A stretch of DNA of 64,000 nt, taken from IMG/VR virus record IMGVR_UViG_3300009093_000035, positions 184,580 through 248,579 of that record. One strand, given 5' to 3'. The notes under the pieces were generated by a model, which saw nothing but the letters and a program-made list of their open reading frames with translations, did no database searches and was not told the DNA's origin. Below are positions 4,394 to 51,443 of the stretch, piece after piece. The position numbers were made by a program, and so were the translations under genes. Positions within the stretch are counted from its first letter, which is position 1, and every line of letters starts with the position of its first letter.

Positions 4394-6028
4394 TCACAGT
4401 GCCGCAGCCGCCTCCTGAGCGGCGACCGGGGCCGGGGCCTTCTCTTCGAGAGAGACGGCCTCGATCTTCTTCACCCAGTGATCCTTGCCCGAGCCCTTGA
4501 CGAACTCGGTCATGAGGGTGAAGACCTCGTCGGAGAAGCCGCCGACGTTGAGGATGTCCTCACGCGTCGGAGCCTGGCGAGAACCGTTCGGCGCGAGGTC
4601 GATGCAGACCATCTTCGCCTTCGGGTTCCGAGCGCGGAGAGCCTCCCACTCGACCATCGCCGCCGTCGGAGACGACGTGTGGCCAGAGGTGTAGGCGTTG
4701 TGGACGACCTTCGTGTCCATCCACGACTCGTTGTCCGAGGCGTAGGTGACGGCGTCCACCTTCTCCTTGTTGTGGTTGAGCGCCCTCATCGGCGCCGAGC
4801 AGTTCGTCCCGCCCGGCGGGCAAGACGCGATCTGGTTCGCGATCGTCATGATCGAGTCCCGCGGGTTGAACCGAAGGTTGATCACGTTCTCCGTGAACGG
4901 GAGAACGATCGCGTCCGGGTTCCGACGCATGAGCGTCGCAGCGATCAGGGCCGCCACGTCACGGCAGGTGACCTTCGTCGCCATCTCGCGCTTCCCCGTG
5001 ACCGGAGACGCCATCGACCCGGAGACGTCCGGGAAGACTGCGATTCGACCCTCGAAGGCCGGAACGTTCTTCGTCGCGATCTCCATCGCGTCCTGGAGAG
5101 CGTTCTGGACCTCCATCGGGACACCCGAGGTGTTCCGGTAGGCGATCAGGAGCTGGTACGGGAAGACCCGAGCCTTCGCGATCGACTCCTCGTCGCGGAG
5201 CTTCGCAGCGATGATCTTCACCATCGCCTTGTCCTCGAAGACGCCGTGGCGGAGGAACGTGTTGAGGTTCATCCGCACCGTCTGCCACGAGGCCGAACGT
5301 GCCAGCTCGATCCACTGGGCCTTCGTCAGCTTCGTGTTCGTGAGCATCAGGAACGGCACGTCCGGGATCGGACGCGACGGATCCTTCTTCCACGCCTCGA
5401 ACTCACGAAGCAGCGGGTCCGCCTTCTCCAGGTCGAACTTCTTCCCCACGAGCCACGCGTAGGTCTCCTTCCGAGCGTCCGTCGCCGGCTTCGGGTGGAC
5501 CATCTTGATCACGTCCGCGATCGACGGCTTGTCGCCCGTCGCCCGGATCAGCTGAGCATCGGTGCGCGCAGCGAACCACGCCTCGACCATCTTCTTCGGA
5601 GCCGTCCCGAGGGACTTCCGGCCGACCTTCCCGGAGCGGATGATCTGGACGAAGTTCCGGACCATCTTCGGGTTGTCGAGGATCCGCGAGAACGACGCCC
5701 GAAGGGCCGCGATACCTGCCGGTCCCCGAGTCGTGAGGTGAGCCGCGAGGAGCGCCGGAGCGTCCTTCATGAAGGCGGACTTCCGCCCGTAGACGGCCGT
5801 CTTCGCGACGAACTCCGGAGAGACCTCGGCCGCAAGCTTCAGGATCGCGTCCAGCTGCTCCTCGTCCGACGTGTAGAACGTCGACCCGAGACAGCCGGTT
5901 GCGGTGTACTGAGCGAGGGCCTCCTTCGGGCCCGCCTTGTAGGCGAGACCGCCGGCCGCGTTGAACATGTCGGCGATCGGCGCGACGCGACCCGCCGGAG
6001 CGGACTTGAAAAGCTTCTTGTTTGCCAC
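4394..6028 (-). CDS. rsr: Ro60/Rsr TROVE-domain RNA-binding protein with C-terminal vWA domain
   Basis: Likely GTG start at 6028 (MANKKLFKS, preceded by AAGGGG); N.AGG.AY, FVAKTAVYGR, MVRNF, VRMNL, ARVFPYQL, MIDAS DVSGSM, GGTNCS, SDNESW, GGFSD. Confidence 0.92.
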   Translation of the reverse strand: MANKKLFKSAPAGRVAPIADMFNAAGGLAYKAGPKEALAQYTATGCLGSTFYTSDEEQLDAILKLAAEVSPEFVAKTAVYGRKSAFMKDAPALLAAHLTTRGPAGIAALRASFSRILDNPKMVRNFVQIIRSGKVGRKSLGTAPKKMVEAWFAARTDAQLIRATGDKPSIADVIKMVHPKPATDARKETYAWLVGKKFDLEKADPLLREFEAWKKDPSRPIPDVPFLMLTNTKLTKAQWIELARSASWQTVRMNLNTFLRHGVFEDKAMVKIIAAKLRDEESIAKARVFPYQLLIAYRNTSGVPMEVQNALQDAMEIATKNVPAFEGRIAVFPDVSGSMASPVTGKREMATKVTCRDVAALIAATLMRRNPDAIVLPFTENVINLRFNPRDSIMTIANQIASCPPGGTNCSAPMRALNHNKEKVDAVTYASDNESWMDTKVVHNAYTSGHTSSPTAAMVEWEALRARNPKAKMVCIDLAPNGSRQAPTREDILNVGGFSDEVFTLMTEFVKGSGKDHWVKKIEAVSLEEKAPAPVAAQEAAAAL

Positions 6029-6055
6029 GGTAACACCCCTTCGAACAAAGGAGGG

Positions 6056-6085
6056 CTCTGGCAACTGGATAGGAGTTCCTTCAGG
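6056..6085. repeat. Arm 1 of a 30-nt long-range inverted repeat (partner 14426-14455)
   Basis: Reverse complement CCTGAAGGAACTCCTATCCAGTTGCCAGAG matches 14426-14455 at 28/30. Confidence 0.9.
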
Positions 6086-6229
6086 AAGATTGAACGTGAG
6101 GTCGTTGACGACGAACGCTTGCGTAGAGCGTTGTCCGCGGAGGTTCAGGAGGCTGATCAATTCCTCCCGTAGGCAAGCCTACTTAGCACCAACGTAGAGC
6201 GTCGCCGACAACTCGGCCTGACCTCACGA

Positions 6230-8762: not shown

Positions 8763-8768
8763 TCTACA

Positions 8769-8851: not shown

Positions 8852-8868
8852 ATTACGAATCGAACCAG

Positions 8869-8954
8869 TGCTCGGGGGGAGAGTCGAACTCCCATGACCG
8901 CGAAGGATCGTTGGATTCTTAGTCCAGTGTGTCTGCCAGTTCCACCACCCGAGC
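8869..8954 (-). tRNA. tRNA-Leu(AAG)
   Basis: Loop CTAAGAA, Leu-type D and V arms. Confidence 0.85.
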
Positions 8955-9030
8955 GTACGAACCGAAGATTGTCCAAGATCGAGAGGGGCCCTCCGAGGAA
9001 TCCCTCGGGGGCTGATCCTCCCGTCCGGTA

Positions 9031-9102
9031 TGCGCGAAGAGGGGATTGAACCCCCGACCGTCGCCGTGTAAAGGCGCTGCTCTTCCGCTGAGCTATCCGC
9101 GC
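9031..9102 (-). tRNA. tRNA-Val(UAC)
   Basis: Loop TTTACAC. Confidence 0.9.
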
Positions 9103-9107
9103 GTTGA

Positions 9108-9199
9108 TGGACCTACCTGGACTCGAACCAGGTCAATCGCCGCTCGACCACCCCAGGTTTTCCTTGCTGTGAGGCGATTACGTCACTGAGGTTAGGCCC
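9108..9199 (-). ncRNA. Mini-tmRNA-like RNA (tRNA-like domain only)
   Basis: Acceptor GGGCCTA/TAGGTCC with G3.U70 and A73, stemless D region, helix AATCGCC/GGCGATT, GA then CCTGG-TTCGAGT-CCAGG. Confidence 0.6.
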
Positions 9200-9302
9200 A
9201 TCGAATTGGTTCTCCATGCGCGCTATTCGGAGGAGAAGCCCGAAATGTACGGCGACCGGACTACGTGGCCCACACCACCCGTTATGTCGCTGCGCTTTGG
9301 TC

Positions 9303-9375
9303 TGCACGACCGGAGGATCGAACTCCGCTAGAACGGCTTGTGATACCGTCGCCCTCTCCAGATGGCTCGCCGTGC
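9303..9375 (-). tRNA. tRNA-Val(CAC), atypical D arm
   Basis: GACGGT-ATCACAA-GCCGTT; acceptor GCACGGC/GTCGTGC. Confidence 0.75.
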
Positions 9376-9521
9376 GTCAGGCTCGTCTCGACCCGCGGCC
9401 CCCGAGAGGGCGGAACCCCATCAGGACCATCACTACCGCCACCGGGGGCCAGAGGATGGACTCGACTGCGAGACGAACACGTACTTTGAAGGGCATCCCC
9501 TACCCTACTCGAAGAAACCAA

Positions 9522-9593
9522 TCGGGGTGACAGGGATCGAACCTGCGATCTCACCGTCCCGAACGGTGCGCGATACCACTTCGCTACACCCCG
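9522..9593 (-). tRNA. tRNA-Pro(CGG)
   Basis: CACCG-TTCGGGA-CGGTG. Confidence 0.92.
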
Positions 9594-9769
9594 ATAAATC
9601 GTACTTCGGCGGGTCTCTCACCCCGCATCCTTCCAGGTCCGGATTCCCGTCCGTCTACGCGGCCTTGTACCGCTCCCTCGCTGCTTGTCGTCAGCGGCCC
9701 TGTACGATCGTTCACGAGAAGGGTTCGCCCCGACGCTGCAGACGCCGAGACTACTTTTCCGACTCGCTA

Positions 9770-9838
9770 TCCCTCCCGACGGAATCGAACCGCCTCGTAC
9801 GCCCGTATGAAAGGCATCGCCTCGCCAGAAAGAGAGGG
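9770..9838 (-). tRNA. tRNA(CAU) (Met or Ile2) lacking a D stem
   Basis: Acceptor CCCTCTC/GGGAGGG, loop TTCATAC, T arm GGCGG-TTCGATT-CCGTC. Confidence 0.6.
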
Positions 9839-9845
9839 GTGGACA

Positions 9846-9918
9846 CGTCTCCAGTAGGATTCGAACCTACAATGGACCCTTCGGAGGGGTCAGTGATATC
9901 CAGTTTCACCATGGAGAC
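9846..9918 (-). tRNA. tRNA-Arg(CCG)
   Basis: GACCC-CTCCGAA-GGGTC. Confidence 0.88.
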
Positions 9919-9941
9919 ATTGGCCTTCTACCAAACCAGAG

Positions 9942-10013
9942 CGTCTTCGGAAGGATTCGAACCTTCAATAAGCGGTTCGTAGCCGCTCGTGATATCCATT
10001 TCACCACGAAGAC
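9942..10013 (-). tRNA. tRNA-Arg(ACG)
   Basis: AGCGG-CTACGAA-CCGCT. Confidence 0.9.
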
Positions 10014-10031
10014 ATGAGTCAGAAACAGGAG

Positions 10032-10103
10032 CGTCCACGGAGGGAGTTGAACCCACGACCTGTCGCTTCGTAGGCGACCGCTCTTCCTCTGAGCTACGCG
10101 GAC
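10032..10103 (-). tRNA. tRNA-Arg(ACG)
   Basis: GTCGC-CTACGAA-GCGAC. Confidence 0.9.
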
Positions 10104-10115
10104 ATGAACCGAGAG

Positions 10116-10187
10116 CGTCCCCGGAGGGATTCGAACCCCCGACCGACCGCTTAGAAGGCGATCGCTCTTCCTCTGAGCTACGAGGAC
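10116..10187 (-). tRNA. tRNA-Arg(UCU)
   Basis: Loop CTTCTAA. Confidence 0.9.
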
Positions 10188-10214
10188 ATTGGCTTGCACG
10201 GAAACCCCTACGAA

Positions 10215-10286
10215 AGGTGCGGGTGAGAATCGAACTCACCTCAACCAGGGTTGCAATCTGATGCCCTCAGCCAGAGGGACCGCACC
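10215..10286 (-). tRNA. tRNA-Cys(GCA)
   Basis: Loop TTGCAAC, U73. Confidence 0.8.
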
Positions 10287-10299
10287 AAAGAGAACTAGA

Positions 10300-10363
10300 G
10301 GCCGACAAGTAGCGCCGAGAGGGGGTTACCGTGCAAAGGTGTACTCCCGGCAAGTATTCGGCC
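10300..10363 (-). ncRNA. Y RNA-like #1 (minimal)
   Basis: 5' GGCCGAAU..GGAGUACA / 3' CUUGUCGGCC stem shared with five other copies. Confidence 0.7.
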
Positions 10364-10365
10364 AG

Positions 10366-10437
10366 AGCGGGTGGCGGGGATCGAACCCGCGACGTCCTGG
10401 ATGGGAACCAAGCGCTCTACCGCTGAGCCACACCCGC
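10366..10437 (-). tRNA. tRNA-Gly(CCC)
   Basis: Loop TTCCCAT. Confidence 0.9.
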
Positions 10438-10523
10438 TTGTATTAGATCGAAGTTACGGAAGTTACCAGACCTTATCGAACCTCATGGTAACTCTCGGCT
10501 ACATGGACGGAACCAGAAACCAG

Positions 10524-10594
10524 AGCGGGCAGCGAGAATCGAACTCGCGTCTTCGGCTTGGAAGGCCGAGGCCAAGCCACTTGACCATGCCCGC
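10524..10594 (-). tRNA. tRNA-Gly(UCC)
   Basis: TCGGC-CTTCCAA-GCCGA. Confidence 0.88.
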
Positions 10595-10606
10595 ATACGA
10601 ACCGGA

Positions 10607-11012
10607 TGGACTCGTCCGGAATTGAACCGGAGTCCACGAAGTCTACTACGATCGAGTACCACGCGCGTCTTCAACTCTTACGCCTGTCTTTCTAACGAGG
10701 AAGGCGCGAGGCTTGACAACCTCTCTTTCGGAACTCCCCGCGAAGTCTGCTCGGTTCCCCGCCTCGACTTCGATCGTCCCTCAGATCGCCTTTCGGCTCC
10801 CGCTGAGGTACAGCCGGGATTCCCCTAGCTCGATTACGCCAACGAGGAGAGTGCTAGGGACTCTCCTCGCCGACGGATCAGGCCGCCTGAGCGAGCTGAT
10901 CGTAGCTGCTGTCGTTCGCAGTTACTGTTGGTTGGCTTGATAACCCGGCCTGCCTACCACCCGGAGCGCGCACTCTCTCGTTTCGAACCCCATGTCGAAA
11001 CCTGTCGAGCCC
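10607..11012 (-). ncRNA. ssrA: tmRNA; tag ANDSSYDQLAQAA* at 10878-10919
   Basis: 5' GGGCTCGACAGGTTTCGAC, 3' GGACTCCGGTTCAATTCCGGACGAGTCCA, G3.U70, resume context TAACT-GCG AAC GAC. Confidence 0.95.
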
Positions 11013-11028
11013 GAAGACACTAGACCAG

Positions 11029-11101
11029 AGCCATCGGCGGGAGTTGAACCCGCGACCTCTCGCATACCAAGCGAGCGCTCTTCCAACTGAGCTACGAAGG
11101 C
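11029..11101 (-). tRNA. tRNA-Thr(GGU)
   Basis: Loop TTGGTAT. Confidence 0.9.
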
Positions 11102-11106
11102 AAAAG

Positions 11107-11179
11107 AGCCGGCAGGGGCGCTCGAATCCCCCATCTCCCGCTTACGAAACGGGCGCATCGCCATCTATGCTTTACCGGC
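11107..11179 (-). tRNA. tRNA-Thr(CGU)
   Basis: Loop TTCGTAA. Confidence 0.8.
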
Positions 11180-11276
11180 AAGTTCCCAAGGTGTCCCGAG
11201 AGGACCACTCTCGTTCTTCCGAGGGCGCTTGGACGTTTTTCAAGGGTTGCTGGTTAGGCTCCTCTCACCGTCCTAG

Positions 11277-11348
11277 TGGATCCTACAGGGATTGAACCTG
11301 CGGCCTCTCGGGTGCAAACCGAGCGCTCTCCCGCTGAGCTAAGGACCC
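11277..11348 (-). tRNA. tRNA-Ala(UGC)
   Basis: Loop TTTGCAC, G3.U70. Confidence 0.92.
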
Positions 11349-11352
11349 AAAG

Positions 11353-11420
11353 TGGACCGAGCGGATTCGAACCGCTTCCTTCCGTGTTCCACGGACGCTC
11401 TTCCTTTTGAGCTACGATCC
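11353..11420 (-). pseudogene. tRNA-like element with collapsed anticodon loop
   Basis: Normal D and T arms, but anticodon arm TCCGTG-GAA-CACGGA and 6-bp acceptor. Confidence 0.6.
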
Positions 11421-11478
11421 TCTGTCTCGCCCCGGAAGCGAAACAGTTCGTCAATCGTCCGCGCGAACGACCAACTAG

Positions 11479-11551
11479 TGGACAAGAGGGGGATCGAACC
11501 CCTGACCTACGCCATGCCATGGCGTCGCTCTCCCAGCTGAGCTACTCGCCC
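11479..11551 (-). tRNA. tRNA-Ala(GGC)
   Basis: Loop ATGGCAT, G3.U70. Confidence 0.92.
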
Positions 11552-11820
11552 AAAACGACCCTCGGTAATACAGGCCGCCAACGAAGGAACAAGGCTACTC
11601 TCGTCCGACTCCCGAAGGAATCGTTCTCGTACGTGTCTCCGACCCGGGGCTCCTAGAAGCGCGGAACCGGAACCGACGCGAGATGATCCTCACCGACAAG
11701 GATCGACAGGTACTGCACGGTCTGCTTGCGCCTACCGTTTCCCTCCTTGAGTTTGGAGCCGGACCCGCCTAGGGTTTCTCGCCACCACAGCGTCCTAGGT
11801 CGGGTTGGTGTCCGGCGTGA

Positions 11821-11890
11821 TCGCGGCCCCAAGAGTTGAACTTGGCATCCCTGGGTTATGAGCCCTGGGCAGCGTCCCCGCTGCACCGCA
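11821..11890 (-). tRNA. Atypical initiator-like tRNA(CAU) with miniature D arm
   Basis: GGG-CTCATAA-CCC; D arm CAGCG-GGGA-CGCTG. Confidence 0.6.
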
Positions 11891-11897
11891 TCTACAA

Positions 11898-11971
11898 GAG
11901 CGCGAGAAGGATTTGAACCTCCGACCTACGGGTTATGAGCCCGTCGAGCTGCCAGACTGCTCCACCGCGCA
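11898..11971 (-). tRNA. tRNA-fMet(CAU)
   Basis: Three G-C pairs in the anticodon stem, 1-72 mismatch. Confidence 0.85.
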
Positions 11972-12043
11972 TCGTCCAGGTGGGGATCGAACCCACGACC
12001 TTCCGCGTGTCGAGCGGATGCTCTTCCTCTGAGCCACTGGACG
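11972..12043 (-). tRNA. tRNA-Val(GAC)
   Basis: TCCGC-TCGACAC-GCGGA. Confidence 0.88.
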
Positions 12044-12061
12044 GTCTCGATCTAAGAACCA

Positions 12062-12134
12062 TGGAGCAGATGGGATTCGAACCCAACGCACCTCGTGTAT
12101 CAGACGAAGTAGTGCGACCAGCAACTTCCGCTCC
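12062..12134 (-). tRNA. tRNA-Ile(GAU)
   Basis: Loop CTGATAC. Confidence 0.75.
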
Positions 12135-12154
12135 GTTTTCGAGCCAGACACTAG

Positions 12155-12228
12155 GGTGATCGGGGGGAGTTGAACCCACCGTACCTCGGGTCACAGCCGA
12201 GTGCCTTAACCGTTAGGCTACGACCACC
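12155..12228 (-). tRNA. tRNA-His(GUG) with encoded G-1
   Basis: CTCGG-CTGTGAC-CCGAG; G-1:C73. Confidence 0.9.
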
Positions 12229-12239
12229 ATGAAGAGATT

Positions 12240-12371
12240 CGGGTGACAAGAGCGGAGAAGACGTTTTTTGGACTGCCGCTCTACCATCTGAGCTACCACC
12301 CCCTTTCGGAGACGGGCGGGACTCGAACCCGCGACCCGCAGTGTTGTTGTAGTCCTATTCCAATTCACCCG
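12240..12371 (-). ncRNA. Y RNA-like #2 (YrlA-type, permuted tRNA module)
   Basis: CGGGUGAAU..GACUACA / CUUGUCACCCG; T arm GCGGG-TTCGAGT-CCCGC, GAAA-capped acceptor, then D arm TAGCTCAGATGGTAGAGC. Confidence 0.85.
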
Positions 12372-12372
12372 A

Positions 12373-12445
12373 CGTTCCCGGGAGGACTCGAACCTCCGAC
12401 CTGCCGTTTAGGAAACGGCCCCTCTATCCACTGAGGTACGGGAAC
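12373..12445 (-). tRNA. tRNA-Arg(CCU)
   Basis: GCCGT-TTCCTAA-ACGGC. Confidence 0.9.
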
Positions 12446-12449
12446 ACGA

Positions 12450-12588
12450 TTGCGAGAGAGGGACTTGAACCCCCACGAGCGCTTCCGTTACTTCCCTGGG
12501 AAGCGCTTCCCGTACGGGTTTCACGGATGGGCCTAGGACCCTGTCTCTCCGAGTCGCCTCGGCGCGTCTGCCATTTCGCCATCTCGCA
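12450..12588 (-). ncRNA. Anticodon-less oversized tRNA-Leu mimic A
   Basis: Acceptor TGCGAGA/TCTCGCA, Leu D arm GGCGAAATGGCAGACGC, anticodon arm capped by GCGA, three hairpins in the variable region, normal T arm. Confidence 0.7.
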
Positions 12589-12596
12589 TCGAACAC

Positions 12597-12748
12597 TAGG
12601 GAGAAGGGGAATCGAACCCCCACCGGGCTCTACAGGACTCTCCGCGGTTCGCGACCCTCGGATCCTCCCGTTGGCTCGGGGTGCGCACCCCTTACCGTCC
12701 CTGCCGGAACTTTCATCCCGGTGCGTCTACCAGTTCCGCCATCTCCCG
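12597..12748 (-). ncRNA. Anticodon-less oversized tRNA-Leu mimic B
   Basis: Leu D arm GGCGGAACTGGTAGACGC, CCGGGAT-GAAA-GTTCCGG, ~80-nt structured variable region, normal T arm. Confidence 0.7.
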
Positions 12749-12770
12749 TCAACGAACGGAAGGAAAAGTT

Positions 12771-12903
12771 TGGGCGACAAGTGTTGGCGAAGATCTTTTC
12801 GTCGCTCTACCAACTGAGCTACCGCCCCGTGAAAGTGGGGCGGGCTGGACTCGAACCAGCGGCCTCCGGCTTGAAATGCTGTAATCCTCTCCGAATTCAC
12901 CCA
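12771..12903 (-). ncRNA. Y RNA-like #3 (YrlA-type)
   Basis: UGGGUGAAU..GAUUACA / CUUGUCGCCCA; GCTGG-TTCGAGT-CCAGC, closed acceptor CCGCCCC/GGGGCGG, D arm TAGCTCAGTTGGTAGAGC. Confidence 0.85.
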
Positions 12904-12904
12904 A

Positions 12905-12977
12905 CGTTCCCGGAGGGGATCGAACCCCCGACCTGCGGTTTCGAAGACCGCCGCTCTTCCGGCTGAGCTACGAGAAC
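12905..12977 (-). tRNA. tRNA-Arg(UCG)
   Basis: GCGGT-CTTCGAA-ACCGC. Confidence 0.9.
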
Positions 12978-13019
12978 CCTCGATTTATGGCTTCGAGGTA
13001 CCTTTGCGCGCGAAGGAAG

Positions 13020-13094
13020 CGTCCCGTGGGGGATTTGAACCCGCCGTCGCCAGATTGAGAGTCTAGCATCCTAGGCCAACTAGAAGAACGGGAC
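13020..13094 (-). tRNA. tRNA-Glu(CUC)
   Basis: Loop CTCTCAA. Confidence 0.88.
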
Positions 13095-13099
13095 ATAGA

Positions 13100-13175
13100 G
13101 GCGAGACAAGAGAGACCGAGACGAGGGGCTTTCGCCCCACATTACCCAAAATGTAGTCCCGATCGAATTCTCACC
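13100..13175 (-). ncRNA. Y RNA-like #4 (minimal)
   Basis: GGUGAGAAU..GACUACA / CUUGUCUCGCC; GGGGC-GAAA-GCCCC hairpin. Confidence 0.72.
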
Positions 13176-13176
13176 A

Positions 13177-13249
13177 TGGACAGGAGGGGGATTGAACCCC
13201 TGACCTCTGCATTGCGAACGCAGCGCTCTCCCAGCTGAGCTACCCGCCC
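13177..13249 (-). tRNA. tRNA-Ala(CGC)
   Basis: Loop TTCGCAA, G3.U70. Confidence 0.92.
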
Positions 13250-13390
13250 AAACGAAAACCAGGTTCTCGAATCGGACTCGGGTAGGTCGATTCCCTTTCG
13301 GGAGGTGGCCTACCCTATCCCTAGCTCCTCGGGCCTGGCGCTACCGAGAAGATCCGAGCCAGCGAGGACCGAGGTCCCCGCGAAGATAGC

Positions 13391-13514
13391 CGTGCGACAA
13401 GAGTGACAGCGACGTTTTCTAGGCCCGAGCCTCGCTCCCTTTCGGGAACGACCAGGATTCGAACCTGGCTCGATTGTTGTTCATACAATGTAGTCCCCAT
13501 CGAGTATTCGCACG
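13391..13514 (-). ncRNA. Y RNA-like #5 (T arm plus GAAA-closed acceptor, degenerate D arm)
   Basis: CGUGCGAAU..GACUACA / CUUGUCGCACG; CCAGG-TTCGAAT-CCTGG; TCGTTCCC-GAAA-GGGAGCGA. Confidence 0.8.
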
Positions 13515-13516
13515 AG

Positions 13517-13589
13517 TCGGGATGACCGGATTCGAACCGACGTCTCCTGCGCCCAAGGCAGGTGCTAAACCAGGCTCAGCTACATCCCG
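13517..13589 (-). tRNA. tRNA-Pro(UGG)
   Basis: CCTGC-CTTGGGC-GCAGG. Confidence 0.9.
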
Positions 13590-13600
13590 AACAGAAACCA

Positions 13601-13676
13601 TGCAGCGAACTGGAGTTGAACCAGTGCCTCCCGGGTTTCAACCGAGCGCTCTACCTATGGGCTGAGCTATCGCTGC
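13601..13676 (-). tRNA. tRNA-Phe(GAA)
   Basis: Loop TTGAAAC. Confidence 0.85.
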
Positions 13677-13679
13677 GTA

Positions 13680-13752
13680 TGCTACGGGTCGGAATTGAAC
13701 CGACGACACCCCGCTCTTCAGGCGAGTGCTCTACCAACTGAGCTACCGTAGC
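13680..13752 (-). tRNA. tRNA-Phe(GAA)
   Basis: Loop CTGAAGA. Confidence 0.9.
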
Positions 13753-13758
13753 AAGACA

Positions 13759-13832
13759 CGCCCCCGAAGAGAATCGAACTCTCCTCGACCCTGCTTGACA
13801 AGCAGGCGTCTTCACCAGAGGACTACGAGGGC
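13759..13832 (-). tRNA. tRNA-Asp(GUC)
   Basis: CCTGC-TTGTCAA-GCAGG. Confidence 0.88.
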
Positions 13833-13850
13833 AGGAACCAGGAAATTTAA

Positions 13851-13939
13851 GGCGACAAAGATCCCGAAGACACAGAGCGAGCCTTTCGGCCCTCTCTTCT
13901 GGTTTTGGTAGAAGAATGTAGTCTTCAGAGCATTCGCCC
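13851..13939 (-). ncRNA. Y RNA-like #6 (minimal)
   Basis: GGGCGAAU..GACUACA / UUUGUCGCC; GAAA-capped hairpin. Confidence 0.7.
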
Positions 13940-13940
13940 A

Positions 13941-14008
13941 CGGGCTGTTAGGGACTCGAACCCAGCGCGGTCGGTTTTGGAGGCCAACCTGTGCCCTGCA
14001 CCCAGCCC
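13941..14008 (-). tRNA. tRNA-Trp(CCA) with miniature D arm
   Basis: Loop CTCCAAA; D arm GTGC-AGG-GCAC. Confidence 0.7.
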
Positions 14009-14157
14009 AATAGCTGAGACCGTCCGGCCTACGGGCCCGCACGATCTCGTACCTCCTCCTACACATGGCAGGTGAGATCTAAGAATAGCGACCGGCGCTC
14101 GCCCCGAGTGCTCGTCCTCCCTACCGGAGGCTGCGTTCTCGAAGTGCTTTCGGTCTA

Positions 14158-14229
14158 CTCCTGGGGCAGGAGTCGAACCTGCGGTAGGCGAGTTAACAGC
14201 TCGCTGCCTTACCACTTGGCTACCCAGGA
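14158..14229 (-). tRNA. tRNA-Asn(GUU)
   Basis: GCGAG-CTGTTAA-CTCGC. Confidence 0.92.
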
Positions 14230-14269
14230 AGGATCTCAACGGACCCCATCGGAAGAAACGAAGGAGGAA

Positions 14270-14341
14270 CTCCGGCAGTAGGGGTCGAACCTACGACATC
14301 CTGGTTAACAGCCAGGCGCTCTTCCACTGAGCTATACCGGA
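14270..14341 (-). tRNA. tRNA-Asn(GUU)
   Basis: CCTGG-CTGTTAA-CCAGG. Confidence 0.92.
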
Positions 14342-14425
14342 ATGTGAGGGAGGCCCTCCCGTACCCGAGCCCTTGCGAGGCGATTCGAGTACGAGAGTCC
14401 CCTCTCCGCGCCCTTGGGGAGGGCG

Positions 14426-14455
14426 CCTGAAGGAACTCCTATTCAGTTGTCAGAG
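14426..14455. repeat. Arm 2 of the long-range inverted repeat; boxA-like on the minus strand
   Basis: Minus strand CTCTGACAACTGAATAGGAGTTCCTTCAGG. Confidence 0.85.
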
Positions 14456-14516
14456 ACCTCGGAACACAGAGAGCCGTAGTTCACTACGTACTCCAGCCAC
14501 AGGGTGGCTTTTTCAA

Positions 14517-14587
14517 TTCCCAGTCGAGGATTCGAACCTCAGTTGTCCGAGTCAGATTCGGAAGTCCTGCCGCTAGACGAACCGGGA
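14517..14587 (-). tRNA. tRNA-Gln(CUG)
   Basis: TCCGA-ATCTGAC-TCGGA. Confidence 0.88.
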
Positions 14588-14659
14588 TGGGACACCGGGG
14601 ACTCAAACCCCGTTCTTCCGATTAAGAGTCGGATGCTTCATCACTAAAGCTTGTGTCCC
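14588..14659 (-). tRNA. tRNA-Lys(CUU)
   Basis: TCCGA-CTCTTAA-TCGGA. Confidence 0.85.
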
Positions 14660-14677
14660 GAACTGGAACCGAGGAAC

Positions 14678-14749
14678 TGGGACCGGTGGGGATCGAACCC
14701 ACGACCGTCGGGTTAAAAGCCCGCTGTTCTACCGCTGAACTACGGTCCC
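14678..14749 (-). tRNA. tRNA-Lys(UUU)
   Basis: Loop CTTTTAA. Confidence 0.9.
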
Positions 14750-14796
14750 GAGAGGGGAACCGCAGGGTTTGAGGTTGACGTACATCTTTCGAACCA

Positions 14797-14879
14797 TGGA
14801 GACGCCAGGAATCGAACCTGATTTCCTCCGAAGAGGGGCGGGGTTACAGTCCGCCTACGAGGCCACTCGTATCATCTCC
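14797..14879 (-). tRNA. tRNA-Tyr(GUA)
   Basis: Loop CTGTAAC, V arm. Confidence 0.8.
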
Positions 14880-14890
14880 AAAAGGAACCA

Positions 14891-14974
14891 TGGAGTGTGA
14901 GGGATTCGAACCCTCAATGTCCGAAGACTCCTGATTTACAGTCAGGTGGGGCTACCAATGCCCACGTACACTCC
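14891..14974 (-). tRNA. tRNA-Tyr(GUA)
   Basis: CCTGA-CTGTAAA-TCAGG, V arm. Confidence 0.82.
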
Positions 14975-16646: not shown

Positions 16647-17855
16647 ATGACCCAGATCACCAGCTCGAAGTCGGTCGCCCTCATGAAGTTCCTCTCGGCC
16701 CTCGCCCGAAAGCTCGGGGTAGGGGCTCACGTCTACGTCGTGGGTGGGGCCGTCCGGAACTTCCTCATGGGACAGCCGGTGAAGGACCTCGACGTCGTGA
16801 TCGACTCGATCGCCCTCGGAGAAGGTCGAGACAGCGCCTGGTTCGCGTCCAACGTTCTGGAGGCGATCCCCGAGTGGTCCAACCTCACGACGAACCAGTA
16901 CGGGGTCGCGATCCTCACGGTGAAGGGACCCTGGGTCCTCGACGGCTTCTCCATGGAGGGGGAAGTGATCGAGATCGCCAACGCTCGGAAGGAGTCCTAC
17001 GGGTCCTCGGGCGGGAAAGGGAAGGGCTACAAGCCCACCGACGTCCAGCCCTCCACGATCGAGGAGGACATCTACCGGCGCGAGTTCACGTTCAACACCT
17101 TGCTGTGGCGCCTCGAAGACGTTGCGGAAGGACCGGAAGGGGCTCCGGTGATCGACATCACGGGGCTCGGCCTCACCCACCTCAAAGAGAAGCTGATCCA
17201 AACGCCTCTCGATCCGGACCGGACGTTCTCCGACGACCCGACGAGGATGCTCCGGGCGATCAAGTTCCTCATGCGCTACGACCTCCGCCTCTCCGAAGAG
17301 GTCGAGCGGTCGATCATGAAGAACGCCTCGAAGATGACCCAGATGCCTTGGGAGGCGGTCGCTACGATCCTCGTCCGTGACATCCTCTCGCTCCCCAGCG
17401 CGAAGGAAGCTCTCTTCCGGATGATGGGGCTCGGGCTCGTTCGAGTTCTGAAGGGGATGGTCCAGGACCAGCCTCCCTTCGCCTCGTACATGGCGGGTCA
17501 GTTCGGCTCGGGCGAGGCGGACCTGAAGCTTCTCGTCCTCATGGATGACCTCGGGCTCGGAGGACGCGCGTTCAGCTTCCTCTCCCCGGCCCAGAAGGTT
17601 CGCTTCAAGGCTCTGGTCGTCGGGGCCGAGGACGAGTGGGTCCGGAAGCTCTACACGCTTCTCCAGAAGCCCCCGATCCGATCTCTGGCTCTGTTCGCGG
17701 ACTTCGGCCTCGAAGGGAAGGCGCGGTCAGCCCCCGCGATCTTCGCCCGAGAGGCGATCCTCGAAGACCTCTCGTTGGTCGAAGAGCCGGAACGGATCGA
17801 AGCGGTCGTACGGGAGATGCTCGGGGGGATTCCGCCGGCCCCTCCCGCCCCCTAG
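16647..17855 (+). CDS. cca: Class II CCA-adding tRNA nucleotidyltransferase / poly(A) polymerase family
   Basis: YVVGGAVRN..DLDVV, IEIANARKESY, EDIYRREFTFN, FSDDPTRMLRAIKF; tRNAs here lack encoded CCA. Confidence 0.85.
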   Translation: MTQITSSKSVALMKFLSALARKLGVGAHVYVVGGAVRNFLMGQPVKDLDVVIDSIALGEGRDSAWFASNVLEAIPEWSNLTTNQYGVAILTVKGPWVLDGFSMEGEVIEIANARKESYGSSGGKGKGYKPTDVQPSTIEEDIYRREFTFNTLLWRLEDVAEGPEGAPVIDITGLGLTHLKEKLIQTPLDPDRTFSDDPTRMLRAIKFLMRYDLRLSEEVERSIMKNASKMTQMPWEAVATILVRDILSLPSAKEALFRMMGLGLVRVLKGMVQDQPPFASYMAGQFGSGEADLKLLVLMDDLGLGGRAFSFLSPAQKVRFKALVVGAEDEWVRKLYTLLQKPPIRSLALFADFGLEGKARSAPAIFAREAILEDLSLVEEPERIEAVVREMLGGIPPAPPAP

Positions 17856-36890: not shown

Positions 36891-37298
36891 TCACTCCCCG
36901 AGGTCGATCACGGTGGTTTGGGTCTGGACCCCGAAGACGTTGACGAGCCAGTTCACGGTGACCCCGTCCGCTCCCGTCACGATCACGAGAAGGTTCCCCT
37001 CCCCATCGAAGTCGAAGGAGACGTCCCAGAGGGAGGCCGCCGTGTTCTTCATCGGGGCGTAGACGTCGATCGACGAGATCAGGTCAGGCAGCCCATCCGA
37101 CTCGCGACGAAGAAACACGCGCTTCTGAACGTGGTAGGCACCGTTGTTCGAGGAAGACCCCGCGACCACTTCCACGTCGAACGCGGTGACCGTGGAGTGA
37201 TCCACGGTATCCCGGGTCGCCATCGTAGGCACGCTGTCCGTAGTGACCACCGTCGGAGATCGAGCGTCTACACCCATGATGAGAACCCTCCTGATCAC
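36891..37298 (-). CDS. Hypothetical, paralog of 6368-6772
   Basis: Colinear similarity. Confidence 0.7.
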   Translation of the reverse strand: MIRRVLIMGVDARSPTVVTTDSVPTMATRDTVDHSTVTAFDVEVVAGSSSNNGAYHVQKRVFLRRESDGLPDLISSIDVYAPMKNTAASLWDVSFDFDGEGNLLVIVTGADGVTVNWLVNVFGVQTQTTVIDLGE

Positions 37299-38287
37299 CC
37301 ATTACTCCTTCGCCAGAAGGACTCTTGGACTTGGACGCAGAGATCGTTGATCTTGGCGTAGTTCGGATCCTTCGGGAGCGGAGCCGTAACCTTCTTGGCT
37401 TCGGCCTGAAGCTTCGTCGCCTGTTCCATGAGGTGATCGTAGGACCACTCGCCCCGGCGGATCGCGAGAAGCTCCTCCGCGTCGTCGCGATAGACGAGCA
37501 CCCCCTTCCCGGAGCAGATCTCCAGGCACATTCTCATGAGACGAACGAGGTGCATCGCGTGCTTCGTGTCGTAGCCGTACTTCGCTTCGAGCGCGGCACG
37601 CTTCTCGTTCCGATTCTTCTGCCAGTCCAGGAACTGGTTCCAGTGCTTCAGATCGGTGCGGTAGCGCTTCTCCGCCGCGAGAAGCTCCATGACGTTCGGG
37701 TCGACCTCGATCTCCCCTCCGCTCTCTCGGGTCTTCTCGATCGTGGCCTCGTAGGCTCCGATCATCTCGGGGGAGATCTTCACCTTCTCCAGTCCGTAGT
37801 CCTTCCGGTCGGGCTGAACCTTCGGCGGGTTGAGGAGCCACTTGCGGTGGGTCTCGATCCGTCCGAGCTGGGAGTAGGCGTACCCCGAGAACGTCGCGCG
37901 GATCGCCTGGGAGAGGAAGATCTCCCGAGCCTCCCGGAGCATCCCTCCCTCCTCCGACATGAAGAGGACGTCCGCGTCCCGGACGAAGAGGACCTCGATG
38001 ATGTTGGGGTTGCAAGCCGCCGCGAGGAGGCAGAACTTCCGGACGTCGAAGAGGACGCGATCGATCACATCCTCAGGCTTCGTTCCTGGAGGTGCGTCCT
38101 CGGGCTTGATCTCGAACTGTTCGAACTCGTAGGCGAATCCGAGGACGATCTCCTTCGGAGCCACCACGATCCCCTTCGTGTCGACGTCCGAGTCCGGAAG
38201 GTTCGTCCCGTAGGCGTGACTTCCGTGGTTCGCGAGGAAGATCGTGTGGGCCGCGTAGTTGAAGGGAGGATGGAGGTTCTTGGACAT
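37295..38287 (-). CDS. Pol-beta-superfamily nucleotidyltransferase (RlaP/YcgL-like, RNA repair associated)
   Basis: GSHAYGTNLPDSDVDTKG, CNPNIIEVLF, GYDTKHAMHLVRL, LLAIRRG. Confidence 0.8.
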   Translation of the reverse strand: MSKNLHPPFNYAAHTIFLANHGSHAYGTNLPDSDVDTKGIVVAPKEIVLGFAYEFEQFEIKPEDAPPGTKPEDVIDRVLFDVRKFCLLAAACNPNIIEVLFVRDADVLFMSEEGGMLREAREIFLSQAIRATFSGYAYSQLGRIETHRKWLLNPPKVQPDRKDYGLEKVKISPEMIGAYEATIEKTRESGGEIEVDPNVMELLAAEKRYRTDLKHWNQFLDWQKNRNEKRAALEAKYGYDTKHAMHLVRLMRMCLEICSGKGVLVYRDDAEELLAIRRGEWSYDHLMEQATKLQAEAKKVTAPLPKDPNYAKINDLCVQVQESFWRRSNG

Positions 38288-50627: not shown

Positions 50628-51443
50628 TCAGGTCACGTTCTCGGGGACGATCCCGAAGAGAGCCTCCACACGCTCCGGAGTCGACATGTCGTGAAGCGGC
50701 TTCGGATGGAAGGGCCGAAGCTCGTTGCGGACGTACCGGAGGGTCCCCCCGTTTCGACCGTGATGCTTCGGGGGAAGTTGTTCGGCTTCCTCGGGCGTGT
50801 ACTTCCGTTCGACCTCGACCTCGACCCGAGTGACGAAGGCTCCGCGCCGGAAGTGTTCCGGGTAGGCGTCGAAGTCGACCCCGACGCTCCGGAGCATCTC
50901 TCGCTTCTCCTCGCTCGTTTTGTTGAGAAGTTCCTTGTGATGGAAGCACGTCGAGGCCGCCATCGTGTAGGAGTTCTTCCGCGCATCCAGCTCGCGCCAG
51001 AGCAGCGTAGCTGCCGCGTCCGCGATCGTCGGGACCGACCACGCCCGCGAATCGAAGAGAGGAGACTGGCCCGCCTTCTCCGGGATCCGAGCGTCGAGAT
51101 TCCGAGCGAACCACGACGAGGCGAAGGCCGCCGTCATGGACGCGATCTTCTGAGCCCGAAGTCCGAAGTAGCCGTCCGAGTCTTCGTTCGGCTGAAGCAG
51201 CACGAGGGAGATCTCGTCCGACTGAGTGTAGCCGACGCGAGCCCCGGTCTCGGCGACGAGCGCGCAGGTCAGATCGTACATCATCGACGACAATCGGACG
51301 TCGTACGGACGTTCGAGGTCGCGGGTGAACGCGGAGAACGCGCGCCCGTCGAGACGGATGCAGATCGGGTACGTCAGGCGCCGAGCGCTCTCGACGCCTT
51401 CAAGCTGCTTCATGTGATCGCCCAGAGTGTCCATCATTCCCAT
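50628..51443 (-). CDS. Thg1-like 3'-5' polymerase (tRNAHis guanylyltransferase family)
   Basis: RLDGRAFSAFT, YTQSDEISL, FDSR, WRELDARKNS. Confidence 0.9.
   Translation of the reverse strand: MGMMDTLGDHMKQLEGVESARRLTYPICIRLDGRAFSAFTRDLERPYDVRLSSMMYDLTCALVAETGARVGYTQSDEISLVLLQPNEDSDGYFGLRAQKIASMTAAFASSWFARNLDARIPEKAGQSPLFDSRAWSVPTIADAAATLLWRELDARKNSYTMAASTCFHHKELLNKTSEEKREMLRSVGVDFDAYPEHFRRGAFVTRVEVEVERKYTPEEAEQLPPKHHGRNGGTLRYVRNELRPFHPKPLHDMSTPERVEALFGIVPENVT

What the first reader, a model, noticed from the sequence alone, without database searches (positions are those of the whole stretch)
12450..12748. Two oversized tRNA-Leu mimics with GNRA-capped anticodon arms
Seen: both keep Leu-type D arms, T arms, acceptor stems and A73. 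The anticodon loop is replaced by a tetraloop (GCGA; GAAA), and the variable region expands to ~70-80 nt of hairpins. Both lie between two YrlA-type RNAs. Two divergent copies with the same design argue against random decay. Established: bacterial LeuRS largely ignores the anticodon. Inference: chargeable non-decoding tRNA mimics, such as anticodon-nuclease decoys, Leu donors or Ro60 cargo.
Basis: partly seen in the sequence, partly recalled or inferred. Interest (0 to 1): 0.8.

Follow-up and report, generated by a model that had tools for sequence, protein, structure and literature searches.

The report
Anticodon-less tRNA-Leu mimics in a phage
Two neighbouring genes in a giant soil phage's tRNA cluster encode oversized copies of leucine tRNA that keep the whole tRNA body but have the anticodon loop sealed by a four-base cap, so they cannot read codons. 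A related phage keeps one of them through compensating mutations, which suggests a working tRNA look-alike whose job is still unknown.

Summary
On the minus strand, A (12748-12597, 152 nt) and B (12588-12450, 139 nt) are tRNA-Leu-derived cloverleaves. Each has a Leu-type D arm, U8, the A15:U48 pair, G18G19, A20a, a canonical T arm and A73. The anticodon loop is replaced by a capped hairpin (7 bp + GAAA; 5 bp + GCGA), and the variable region is 82 or 74 nt. ARAGORN and Rfam do not call either as a tRNA.

They sit among Y-RNA-like genes in a 46-tRNA array of a 248-kb rhizosphere jumbo phage. That phage also encodes Ro60, a CCA-adding enzyme, RlaP and a Thg1-like protein.

New evidence:
- A relative (Ro60 78% identical) has one orthologue of B at the same site, about 71% identical. 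Compensatory changes occur in all four cloverleaf stems and in the insert's arm.
- A, B and this orthologue share an AGRGAC linker and an N5-GCGC-N5' hairpin found nowhere else in these sequences.
- The orthologue's cap is not GNRA, so the conserved trait is loss of the anticodon loop.
- Another relative has an 87-nt UUCG-capped version. Two unrelated phages have GNRA-capped Leu-like tRNAs.

No hidden anticodon, intron signature or Ro60-binding motif was found. Best reading: functional non-decoding tRNA-Leu mimics. Charging and function are untested.

The parts
12597..12748 (-). Element A: 152-nt anticodon-less tRNA-Leu mimic. Acceptor 12748-12742 / 12604-12598, D arm 12739-12723, capped stem-loop 12721-12704, insert 12703-12622, T arm 12621-12605, A73 at 12597.
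   Evidence: model R1 scores it 127 bits.
12711..12714 (-). GAAA tetraloop capping a 7-bp stem in place of A's anticodon loop. If the inner A:U and U.G pairs open, this reads as a 5-bp stem with an 8-nt loop.
12678..12691 (-). GGGGU-GCGC-ACCCC hairpin in A's insert, part of the family signature.
   Evidence: it is one of only two such palindromes in 64 kb, against 0.84 expected by chance.
12450..12588 (-). Element B: 139-nt anticodon-less tRNA-Leu mimic. Acceptor 12588-12582 / 12457-12451, D arm 12579-12564, capped stem-loop 12562-12549, insert 12548-12475, T arm 12474-12458, A73 at 12450.
   Evidence: Orthologue at L300:3715-3858. Model R1 scores it 137 bits.
12554..12557 (-). GCGA tetraloop capping the 5-bp stem CCGAG/CUCGG in place of B's anticodon loop.
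   Evidence: The same GAG-GCGA-CUC cap occurs in L303:2927-3063.
12498..12511 (-). GGGAA-GCGC-UUCCC hairpin at the tip of a three-helix arm in B's insert.
   Evidence: Helices 5 and 6 covary with the orthologue.
12768..12903 (-). YrlA-type Y RNA number 1, immediately upstream of A in the direction of transcription.
   Evidence: Rfam RF02553, 51.3 bits, full-length alignment.
12243..12371 (-). YrlA-type Y RNA number 2, downstream of tRNA-Arg(CCU).
   Evidence: Rfam RF02553, 39.9 bits. I extended the 3' end by eye to the CUUGUCACCC strand.
12371..12446 (-). tRNA-Arg(CCU), 3 nt downstream of B.
12905..12977 (-). tRNA-Arg(UCG), upstream of Y RNA number 1. In the relative L300 the B orthologue lies directly between the two Arg genes.
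4394..6160 (-). Ro60/Rsr homologue (TROVE plus vWA_Ro60 domains) inside the tRNA array.
16647..17855 (+). Probable CCA-adding enzyme (PolyA_pol head domain). The array's tRNAs that I read directly, A and B included, do not encode CCA.
   Evidence: sequence.
37295..38287 (-). RlaP-family RNA-repair nucleotidyltransferase.
50628..51443 (-). Thg1-like 3'-5' polymerase, a family that repairs tRNA 5' ends.

Best explanation
A and B are paralogous members of a small family, specific to one phage clade, of tRNA-Leu-derived RNAs that cannot decode.

Shown:
- They keep the full tRNA body: a 7-position acceptor stem, a Leu-type D arm, the A15:U48 pair, the G18G19/T-loop elbow and A73.
- The anticodon loop is replaced by a tightly capped hairpin.
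- The variable region is enlarged into a structured arm with a conserved AGRGAC linker and a GCGC-capped hairpin.
- The fold is kept through compensatory substitutions in an orthologue.

Inferred:
- They are co-transcribed with the tRNA array.
- They are cut out by RNase P and 3'-end processing like their tRNA neighbours, then given CCA by the phage or host CCA-adding enzyme.
- They accumulate as stable RNAs that tRNA-body-binding proteins, possibly including LeuRS, accept as tRNA-Leu but that the ribosome cannot use for decoding.

Most likely role, also inferred: part of the phage's tRNA-protection and repair module (Ro60 with Y RNAs, CCA enzyme, RlaP, Thg1-like protein). They would act as a mimic or decoy for factors that recognise the tRNA body or acceptor end, with the GCGC arm as an added binding or pairing module.
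For: - The tRNA-Leu core is intact and specific. Alignment with the phage's five tRNA-Leu genes shows this, and the D-arm motif occurs only in Leu genes plus A and B.
- There is no 7-nt loop of anticodon type anywhere in either element.
- An orthologue, B', lies at L300:3715-3858, exactly between tRNA-Arg(UCG) and tRNA-Arg(CCU) and followed by YrlA and tRNA-His. It is 71% identical to B, about the same divergence as YrlA (69%).
- Double compensatory changes occur in the acceptor, D, capped and T stems.
- On the 3-sequence alignment, 88.7% of cells are paired. 14 of 40 pairs change on both sides, against 5.9 +/- 1.9 in shuffles (0 of 500 reach 14) and 2-5 when partners are slid.
- A, B and B' each hold the only N5-GCGC-N5' palindrome of their sequence and share the AGRGAC linker.
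- The same phage is 100% identical over this region in a second sample. A peat-metagenome variant retains at least part of B.
- Capped Leu-type tRNAs recur elsewhere: L302:1069-1155 (9-bp stem plus UUCG, Ro60 76% relative), L015 with two tandem copies (GAAA and GCAA; ARAGORN 'tRNA-???'), and L110:522-649.
- All E. coli LeuRS determinants are present, and the anticodon and variable arms are dispensable for charging (PMC9976931).
- There is precedent for tRNA-type processing of a tRNA-like RNA of the Ro60 system: M. smegmatis YrlA is cut by RNase P and receives CCA in vivo (PMC4201824).
- The phage encodes Ro60, a CCA enzyme, RlaP and a Thg1-like protein, a toolkit described for some jumbo phages (PMC7824862).
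Against: - There is no expression data at all. No RNA run was listed, and no promoter or terminator signal stands out.
- Distribution is patchy. L003 (Ro60 73%) has nothing between the two Arg genes. Model R1 found no further full-length member in 17 loci of relatives.
- Exact-pattern scans of IMG/VR, JGI metagenomes and GTDB genomes returned only the same phage or chance hits.
- Covariation rests on three sequences and on a structure derived from them.
- A has a C1.U72 mismatch, and B and B' have U1:A72. Both are unusual for elongator tRNAs and of unknown effect on RNase P, LeuRS and EF-Tu.
- The inserts of A and B differ in layout.
- The host is unknown, so E. coli identity rules may not apply.
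- No specific target or partner is identified.
Confidence: 0.55

Rival explanations
1. tRNA chassis for a cargo hairpin. The functional part is the enlarged variable arm (the AGRGAC linker plus the GCGC-capped arm). The tRNA body only provides processing by RNase P and CCA addition, and stability. The palindromic GCGC hairpin would bind a protein or let two molecules pair.
For: - The GCGC hairpin and AGRGAC linker are the only insert features shared by A, B and B'. They are unique in their genomes.
- The arm's helices covary between B and B' (helices 5 and 6).
- From established knowledge, engineered tRNA scaffolds stabilise inserted RNAs in bacteria.
Against: - The capped Leu-like tRNAs of L302 and L015 have no such arm, so the body with a sealed anticodon arm seems to be selected on its own.
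- All Leu identity nucleotides are retained, including A73 and A20a, which a mere chassis would not need.
Confidence: 0.15
2. Y-RNA-like partners or substrates of the phage Ro60. A and B would bind Ro60 through part of their insert or their 3' end, as extra Y RNAs or as model misfolded cargo.
For: - They are embedded among at least four Y-RNA-like genes and lie 6-8 kb from the Ro60 gene.
- All close homologues come from Ro60-encoding phages.
- D. radiodurans Yrn1 has a tRNA-like domain whose anticodon-type arm carries a shortened 6-nt loop (PMC4201824).
Against: - A, B and B' have no counterpart of the conserved Ro60-binding strands (5' GGYGAAU... / ...CUUGUCRCC 3') that every Y RNA of this phage carries (read by eye).
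- The Rfam YrlA model does not hit them at E<=10.
- Their ends form a plain 7-bp acceptor stem, not a long bulged helix.
- L015 and L110 carry capped Leu-like tRNAs, and no TROVE-domain gene came up in the little of those loci I looked at. I did not search them for one.
Confidence: 0.12
3. Decaying tRNA-Leu pseudogenes. Duplicated Leu genes would have lost their anticodon loops and picked up G+C-rich palindromic filler, tolerated only because they still allow the array transcript to be processed.
For: - They are absent from several relatives.
- The array contains many other fragmentary tRNA-like pieces.
- The inserts of A and B are hardly alignable.
Against: - Every tertiary-core nucleotide is kept in A, B, B' and L302.
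- All stem differences are compensated and none breaks a helix.
- B and B' are 71% identical yet fold alike.
- Neat caps (GAAA, GCGA, UUCG, GCAA) in at least four lineages are not what loop decay would produce.
Confidence: 0.12
4. Interrupted tRNA-Leu precursors. The insert, or the capped hairpin plus insert, would be removed by splicing to give a normal decoding tRNA. One candidate product is the tRNA-Leu(UAA) that this phage lacks.
For: - The window has five Leu isoacceptors but no UAA anticodon, whereas the relatives L003 and L300 have six.
- One unrelated contig (L040) looks like a tRNA-Leu(UAA) with a 52-nt insertion.
Against: - No stem with a 7-nt loop carrying U33 and a purine at 37 exists anywhere in A or B, so no excision restores an anticodon arm.
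- There is no group I intron or ribozyme hit in Rfam.
- The insert lies in the variable region, not in the anticodon loop.
- L300 has Leu(UAA) and still keeps B'.
Confidence: 0.05

Closest known systems
YrlA-type bacterial and phage Y RNAs (Rfam RF02553; Chen et al. 2014, PMC4201824)
   Same: Both are tRNA-mimicking noncoding RNAs encoded next to Ro60, including in phages. Both keep D and T arms and an acceptor-type stem. At least one YrlA is processed by RNase P and receives CCA. A published hypothesis holds that the tRNA-like domain competes with tRNAs for a nuclease (PMC7790460).
   Different: YrlA is circularly permuted relative to tRNA: the acceptor stem is closed by a loop, and the RNA ends form the Ro60-binding helix. 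A and B have tRNA topology with open acceptor ends, A73 and a closed anticodon arm. They lack the Ro60-binding strands and get no CM hit.
Phage T4 stable RNAs species 1 and 2 (rnaC, rnaD)
   Same: Both are RNAs of 119-139 nt encoded inside a phage tRNA cluster directly beside a tRNA-Arg gene. Both have a tRNA-type T arm at the 3' end, and their function is still unknown.
   Different: T4 rnaC has no Leu-type D arm, its acceptor pairing is only partial, and no sequence similarity is apparent by eye. I know of no Ro60 context for T4.
Minimalist tRNA-Leu substrates of E. coli LeuRS (Larkin et al. 2002, as summarised in PMC9976931)
   Same: These are tRNA-Leu bodies without an anticodon arm or variable arm that remain chargeable, provided A73 and the D/T-loop tertiary contacts are intact. 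A, B, B' and L302 keep exactly these elements.
   Different: Those molecules are laboratory constructs. Here the design is natural, the anticodon stem is kept but sealed, and the variable region is enlarged rather than deleted. Charging is untested.
tmRNA
   Same: Both are non-decoding RNAs with a tRNA-like acceptor/T-arm domain and a large insert between the D region and the T arm. tmRNA is charged by an aminoacyl-tRNA synthetase that ignores the anticodon.
   Different: A and B have no G3:U70 pair, no tag reading frame and no pseudoknot ring, but they do have a full D arm. The phage's own tmRNA is a separate gene at 10607-11012.
Pseudo-tRNAs and non-proteinogenic tRNAs (for example B. cereus tRNA-Other, staphylococcal cell-wall tRNA-Gly) and mascRNA-type tRNA-like transcripts. 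This comparison is recalled from established knowledge and was not tested here.
   Same: Both are tRNA-shaped RNAs processed by tRNA enzymes and used outside decoding.
   Different: As far as I recall, the bacterial pseudo-tRNAs and non-proteinogenic tRNAs keep a 7-nt anticodon loop. None of the RNAs named carries a 70-80-nt variable arm.

Membership tests
Canonical decoding tRNA-Leu | 5-bp anticodon stem closed by a 7-nt loop with U33, a Leu anticodon and a purine at 37 | tested here: not met
   The loops are GAAA and GCGA, and no alternative 7-nt loop of this type exists in either element. ARAGORN and the Rfam tRNA model give no call.
Canonical decoding tRNA-Leu | Type II body: 3-bp D stem with the GG..A20a loop, U8, a T arm with GTTCRA, a 7-bp acceptor stem and A73 | tested here: met
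   Exception: pair 1:72 is C.U in A and U:A in B, instead of G:C.
LeuRS substrate by the E. coli identity set | A73, A15:U48, G18G19, A20a, U8:A14 and the D/T-loop tertiary pairs; anticodon and variable arm not required | tested here: met
   All these nucleotides are present in A, B, B' and L302. The rule set comes from PMC9976931. This is a sequence-level test only.
LeuRS substrate by the E. coli identity set | Actual leucylation by the host or a phage LeuRS | not testable with these tools
   This needs an in vitro charging assay or acid-gel/periodate analysis. The host is unknown.
YrlA / Y RNA (RF02553) | Ro60-binding helix formed by the RNA's 5' and 3' ends, with the conserved strands | tested here: not met
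   No YrlA CM hit on 12450-12748 at E<=10. The motif is absent by eye, whereas it is present in the four Y-like genes nearby.
YrlA / Y RNA (RF02553) | Permuted tRNA-like domain in the order T arm, closed acceptor stem, D arm | tested here: not met
   A and B have the normal tRNA order with open acceptor ends.
tmRNA | G3:U70 alanine identity pair, tag-peptide reading frame and pseudoknots | tested here: not met
   Pair 3:70 is G:C in A and C:G in B. ARAGORN and Rfam find the tmRNA only at 10604-11012.
Intron-containing tRNA (group I or other) | An intervening sequence whose removal restores a standard anticodon arm, or a catalytic intron core | tested here: not met
   No Intron_gpI or ribozyme hit, and no restorable anticodon loop.
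T4 rnaC/rnaD stable RNAs | Sequence or structural homology to T4 species 1 or 2 RNA | tested here: inconclusive
   I only compared by eye with NC_000866 70908-71171. They share the setting and the T arm, with no evident similarity otherwise. No model of the T4 RNAs was available.
New A/B/B' family proposed here | Leu-type tRNA body, sealed anticodon arm, AGRGAC linker and an N5-GCGC-N5' hairpin in an enlarged variable region | tested here: met
   A, B and L300:3715-3858 meet all four features. Model R1 scores them at 127-147 bits, against 55 bits or less for true tRNA-Leu genes, though these three are the sequences the model was built from.

The most novel reading that the evidence does not exclude
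A and B are matured, CCA-tailed and leucylated by LeuRS, yet excluded from decoding. They would form a phage-made pool of Leu-charged (or chargeable) tRNA look-alikes. Such a pool could soak up host weapons aimed at the tRNA acceptor end or body, or feed a non-ribosomal, aminoacyl-tRNA-dependent reaction. That would make them a natural counterpart of the laboratory 'minimalist tRNA-Leu' and a new class of phage counter-defence RNA.
Probability: 0.2. Interest if true: 0.85.

Novelty: new variant of a known kind. Interest (0 to 1): 0.66.

Why it matters
Phage tRNA arrays are usually read as codon-supply or anti-nuclease spare parts. These elements show that an array can also carry tRNA bodies deliberately made unable to decode, maintained by selection, and sitting in a Ro60/Y-RNA/tRNA-repair neighbourhood.

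If they are charged or bind tRNA-directed factors, they give a testable handle on three questions:
- what tRNA mimicry does in the Ro60 system;
- how phages counter tRNA-targeting immunity;
- whether aminoacyl-tRNA look-alikes exist outside translation.

They also expose a gap in annotation. ARAGORN and Rfam miss them, and my scans turned up dozens of other oversized Leu-type tRNA-like genes in viral contigs.

Tried and rejected
- **Cultured-phage relatives.** No match to INPHARED phages for the locus or for 20 kb of the window beyond generic tRNA similarity. The other oversized Leu-like RNAs also gave no match.
- **RNA evidence.** No RNA run was listed. DNA contigs from four metagenomes only showed that the same phage and a peat variant cover part of B. 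The contigs were too fragmented for covariation analysis.
- **Exact 20-mer of B in JGI metagenomes.** Found the same phage twice plus two chance hits in coding sequence.
- **B/B' consensus pattern.** In IMG/VR it hit only the window's own contig. In GTDB genomes it gave three chance hits in coding DNA.
- **L003.** The Leu-type D arm at L003:1955 turned out to be a permuted, YrlA-like RNA, not an A/B homologue.
- **Hidden anticodon arm, intron or ribozyme.** None found.
- **Similarity of the inserts.** No similarity to anything else in the window or relatives, nor convincingly to each other.
- **Alternative long-range helix.** ACCGGG/CCCGGU in A (and CGAG/CUCG in B) closes the whole insert and is favoured by free-energy folding of A. 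I set it aside because it abuts the T stem, removes the U48 linker, is in a different register in B, and is not what RNAalifold recovers from A, B and B'. A switch between the two folds is not excluded.
- **Ro60-binding motif in the inserts.** Not found by eye.
- **Promoter and terminator scan.** Uninformative.
- **Literature searches** for anticodon-less or capped tRNA-like RNAs in phages found no description.

Full report
**What is there.** The window is the last 64 kb of a 248,579-bp viral contig, IMGVR_UViG_3300009093_000035, from a rhizosphere metagenome. On the minus strand, 3863-14974 holds 45 of the window's 46 ARAGORN tRNA genes (one more lies at 39758-39833) and a tmRNA. The same strand carries a Ro60/TROVE gene inside the array at 4394-6160. 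A PolyA_pol-type (CCA-adding) enzyme gene lies just beyond the array on the plus strand.

- A is 12748-12597, 152 nt.
- B is 12588-12450, 139 nt.

Aligned with the phage's five tRNA-Leu genes, both keep the following features:
- the acceptor stem, U8 and the 3-bp D stem;
- a Leu-type D loop (A14, A15, G18G19, A20a);
- U48, the GTTCRA T loop with its 5-bp stem, and A73.

The Leu D-arm motif occurs seven times in the window: the five Leu genes, A and B. Where the 7-nt anticodon loop should be, A has a 7-bp stem capped by GAAA and B has a 5-bp stem capped by GCGA. The variable region is 82 nt in A and 74 nt in B. ARAGORN and the Rfam tRNA model do not report either element, even at E<=10. No stem with a 7-nt loop of anticodon type exists anywhere in them.

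**Surroundings.** The order in the direction of transcription is: tRNA-Arg(UCG), Y RNA number 1 (12903-12768), A, B, tRNA-Arg(CCU), Y RNA number 2 (12371-~12243), tRNA-His.
- Spacers around A and B are 19, 8 and 3 nt, and neither encodes CCA.
- The two Y RNAs match Rfam YrlA over its full length at 51 and 40 bits. That is below the gathering score of 69, but the E-values are 6e-10 and 1e-6.
- Two more Y-like genes are visible by eye at 13512-13395 and 13940-13850.
- Elsewhere the window encodes an RlaP nucleotidyltransferase and a Thg1-like protein.
- Ro60, a CCA enzyme, RlaP and Thg1 together form the tRNA/RNA-repair toolkit described for some jumbo phages (PMC7824862).

**Conservation.**
- The same phage occurs 100% identical over this region in a second JGI sample.
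- A peat-metagenome variant covers at least 12451-12565 of B.
- I collected relatives through Ro60 homologues at 66-81% identity and fetched their contigs.
- L300 (Ro60 78%) carries one orthologue, B', at 3715-3858. It lies directly between tRNA-Arg(UCG) and tRNA-Arg(CCU), followed by a YrlA and tRNA-His.
- B and B' are 71% identical. That matches the YrlA pair (69%) and is less than the flanking tRNAs (82-97%).
- Every helix survives the divergence. Double compensatory changes occur at acceptor pair 2, D-stem pair 2, capped-stem pairs 4 and 5, and T-stem pair 3. Both keep U1:A72 and A73.
- RNAalifold on A, B and B' returns the cloverleaf plus an insert hairpin and a three-helix arm.
- On that structure 88.7% of cells pair. 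14 of 40 pairs change on both sides, against 5.9 +/- 1.9 in column shuffles (0 of 500) and 2-5 when partners are slid.
- Caveat: this rests on three sequences, and the structure was derived from them.

**A family signature in the insert.** A, B and B' all follow the capped stem with AG(A/G)GAC. Each also contains a 5-bp hairpin capped by GCGC: GGGGU-GCGC-ACCCC, GGGAA-GCGC-UUCCC and GAGGA-GCGC-UCCUC. These are the only N5-GCGC-N5' palindromes in the 64-kb window and in the 21.6-kb L300 locus, where 0.84 per 64 kb is expected by chance. None of about 60 other oversized Leu-like RNAs has them. The insert is therefore not filler, although the layouts of A and B otherwise differ.

**What is and is not conserved about the cap.**
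- B' has a CGA/UCGAA mini-loop, not GNRA.
- L302 (Ro60 76%) has an 87-nt Leu-type tRNA with a 9-bp stem capped by UUCG and all the Leu identity nucleotides.
- L303 (Ro60 81%) has a different 137-nt tRNA-like RNA with the same GAG-GCGA-CUC cap as B.
- In unrelated AT-rich viral contigs, L015 has two tandem 74-nt Leu-type tRNAs capped by GAAA and GCAA. ARAGORN labels them 'tRNA-???', and they have U73.
- L110 has a 128-nt Leu-type RNA capped by GAAA.

The recurrent trait is a sealed anticodon arm on a Leu-type body. GNRA is one way of doing that.

Distribution is patchy.
- L003 (Ro60 73%) has nothing at the syntenic site.
- A covariance model built from A, B and B' found no further full-length member in the relatives' loci.
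- Exact-pattern scans of IMG/VR, JGI metagenomes and GTDB genomes gave only the same phage or chance hits.

**What it is not.**
- It is not an interrupted tRNA. No excision restores an anticodon arm, there is no intron or ribozyme hit, and L300 keeps B' although it already has all six Leu isoacceptors.
- It is not a YrlA. The topology is that of a tRNA, not the permuted one, and the Ro60-binding strands are absent.
- It is not a tmRNA.
- Simple decay is unlikely, given intact tertiary-core nucleotides, compensated stems and neat caps in several lineages.

**How it most likely works.**
- Shown: a selected tRNA-Leu body that cannot decode and carries a conserved extra arm.
- Inferred from the tight packing in the array and from established tRNA biology: release by RNase P and 3' processing, then CCA addition. 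The phage has its own enzyme for that. M. smegmatis YrlA shows that tRNA-like RNAs of the Ro60 system do get cut by RNase P and CCA-tailed (PMC4201824).
- Consistent but untested: leucylation. All E. coli LeuRS determinants are present, and tRNA-Leu lacking the anticodon and variable arms is still charged (PMC9976931).
- The weak or mismatched 1:72 pair (C.U in A, U:A in B and B') might reduce EF-Tu binding, as in initiator tRNA. This is my inference from general knowledge.

My preferred role is a mimic or decoy for proteins that read the tRNA body or acceptor end, working beside Ro60/Y RNA, RlaP and the Thg1-like protein. For the YrlA tRNA-like domain, competitive inhibition of a tRNA nuclease has already been proposed (PMC7790460). 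An RNA without an anticodon loop is a less obvious decoy for nucleases that recognise that loop. The rivals are a tRNA chassis for the GCGC arm, a Ro60 partner, pseudogenes and spliced precursors. They are scored separately.

**Novelty.** I found no description of anticodon-less, capped tRNA-Leu mimics in phages in six literature searches. The nearest known things are:
- YrlA Y RNAs;
- the still unexplained T4 stable RNAs rnaC and rnaD, which also sit beside a tRNA-Arg in a tRNA cluster;
- tmRNA;
- laboratory minimalist tRNA-Leu.

I rate this a new variant of a known kind (tRNA-like noncoding RNAs), defined by a four-feature signature, with function open.

**Limits.** There is no transcript evidence. 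There is only one divergent orthologue of the oversized type. The host is unknown.

Noticed in passing
window 13395-13512 (-) and 13850-13940 (-): Two further Y-RNA-like genes not reported by Rfam. Both have the 5' G(U/G)GCGAAU and 3' CUUGUCGC strands. The first also has a T arm and a GAAA-closed acceptor-like stem. With the two YrlA hits, the array holds at least four Y RNAs.
   Followed up: partly
window 12277-12445 vs 12803-12977 (-): The unit [tRNA-Arg + 5' part of YrlA] is duplicated at 76% identity over 177 nt: Arg(UCG)+Y1 and Arg(CCU)+Y2. In L300 and L003 only one YrlA follows the two Arg genes.
   Followed up: partly
window 14797-14879 (-); also L300:1252-1334 and L310:1218-1298: An 83-nt tRNA-Tyr(GUA)-like gene with an unusual D arm that ARAGORN does not call. 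It lies next to the annotated tRNA-Tyr and is conserved in relatives.
   Followed up: no
window ~13945-14030 (-): A tRNA-Trp(CCA)-like sequence with a good T arm that neither tool calls. The window otherwise lacks tRNA-Trp, while the relatives L135 and L299 have one.
   Followed up: no
window 7530-7700, 6808-6868 and 9119-9129 (-): Six more GGTTCGAnTCC T-arm minihelices outside any called tRNA, some in tandem. They may be more tRNA-like RNAs or fragments in the gaps of the array.
   Followed up: no
window 50628-51443 (-), 37295-38287 (-), 16647-17855 (+): A Thg1-like 3'-5' polymerase, an RlaP RNA-repair nucleotidyltransferase and a CCA-adding-type enzyme. With Ro60 they make up a tRNA-repair toolkit. 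Also present: a GroEL-like chaperonin (30856-32919), ThyX, RNase HII, dCTP deaminase and a SET-domain protein.
   Followed up: partly
L303:2927-3063 and L003:9447-9609: A second family of oversized (137 and 163 nt) tRNA-like RNAs just upstream of Ro60 in relatives. They share a GGAGGGGUAGCUGCCCGAG block. The L303 copy has a CUGAG-GCGA-CUCAG cap identical in its core to B's. No counterpart was found in the window by BLAST.
   Followed up: partly
IMG/VR loci L004-L133 (for example L017, L025, L036, L050, L110:246-370): About 50 distinct 123-160-nt genes have a Leu-type D arm, a T arm, a 7-bp acceptor stem and mostly A73, but no recognisable anticodon arm. They occur in unrelated, mostly AT-rich viral contigs and are often solitary. 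Several sub-families exist, and many share the acceptor AGUCAGG/CCUGACU. Rfam's tRNA model hits a few weakly, and none is in cultured-phage records.
   Followed up: partly
L040:4435-4570: This looks like a tRNA-Leu(UAA) carrying a roughly 52-nt insertion in the 5' strand of the anticodon stem, flanked by a CCGGA/UCGGA repeat. It is a possible intervening sequence in a phage tRNA.
   Followed up: no
L299:8111-8187: ARAGORN calls a 'tRNA-Stop' with anticodon UUA (it would read the UAA stop codon) inside the Leu cluster of a relative phage, at the place where other relatives have tRNA-Leu(UAA).
   Followed up: no
one search hit list: The closest cellular Ro60 homologues (about 54% identity) are from Planctomycetota, Myxococcota and Saprospiraceae MAGs. 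This is a weak hint about the host range of this phage clade.
   Followed up: no
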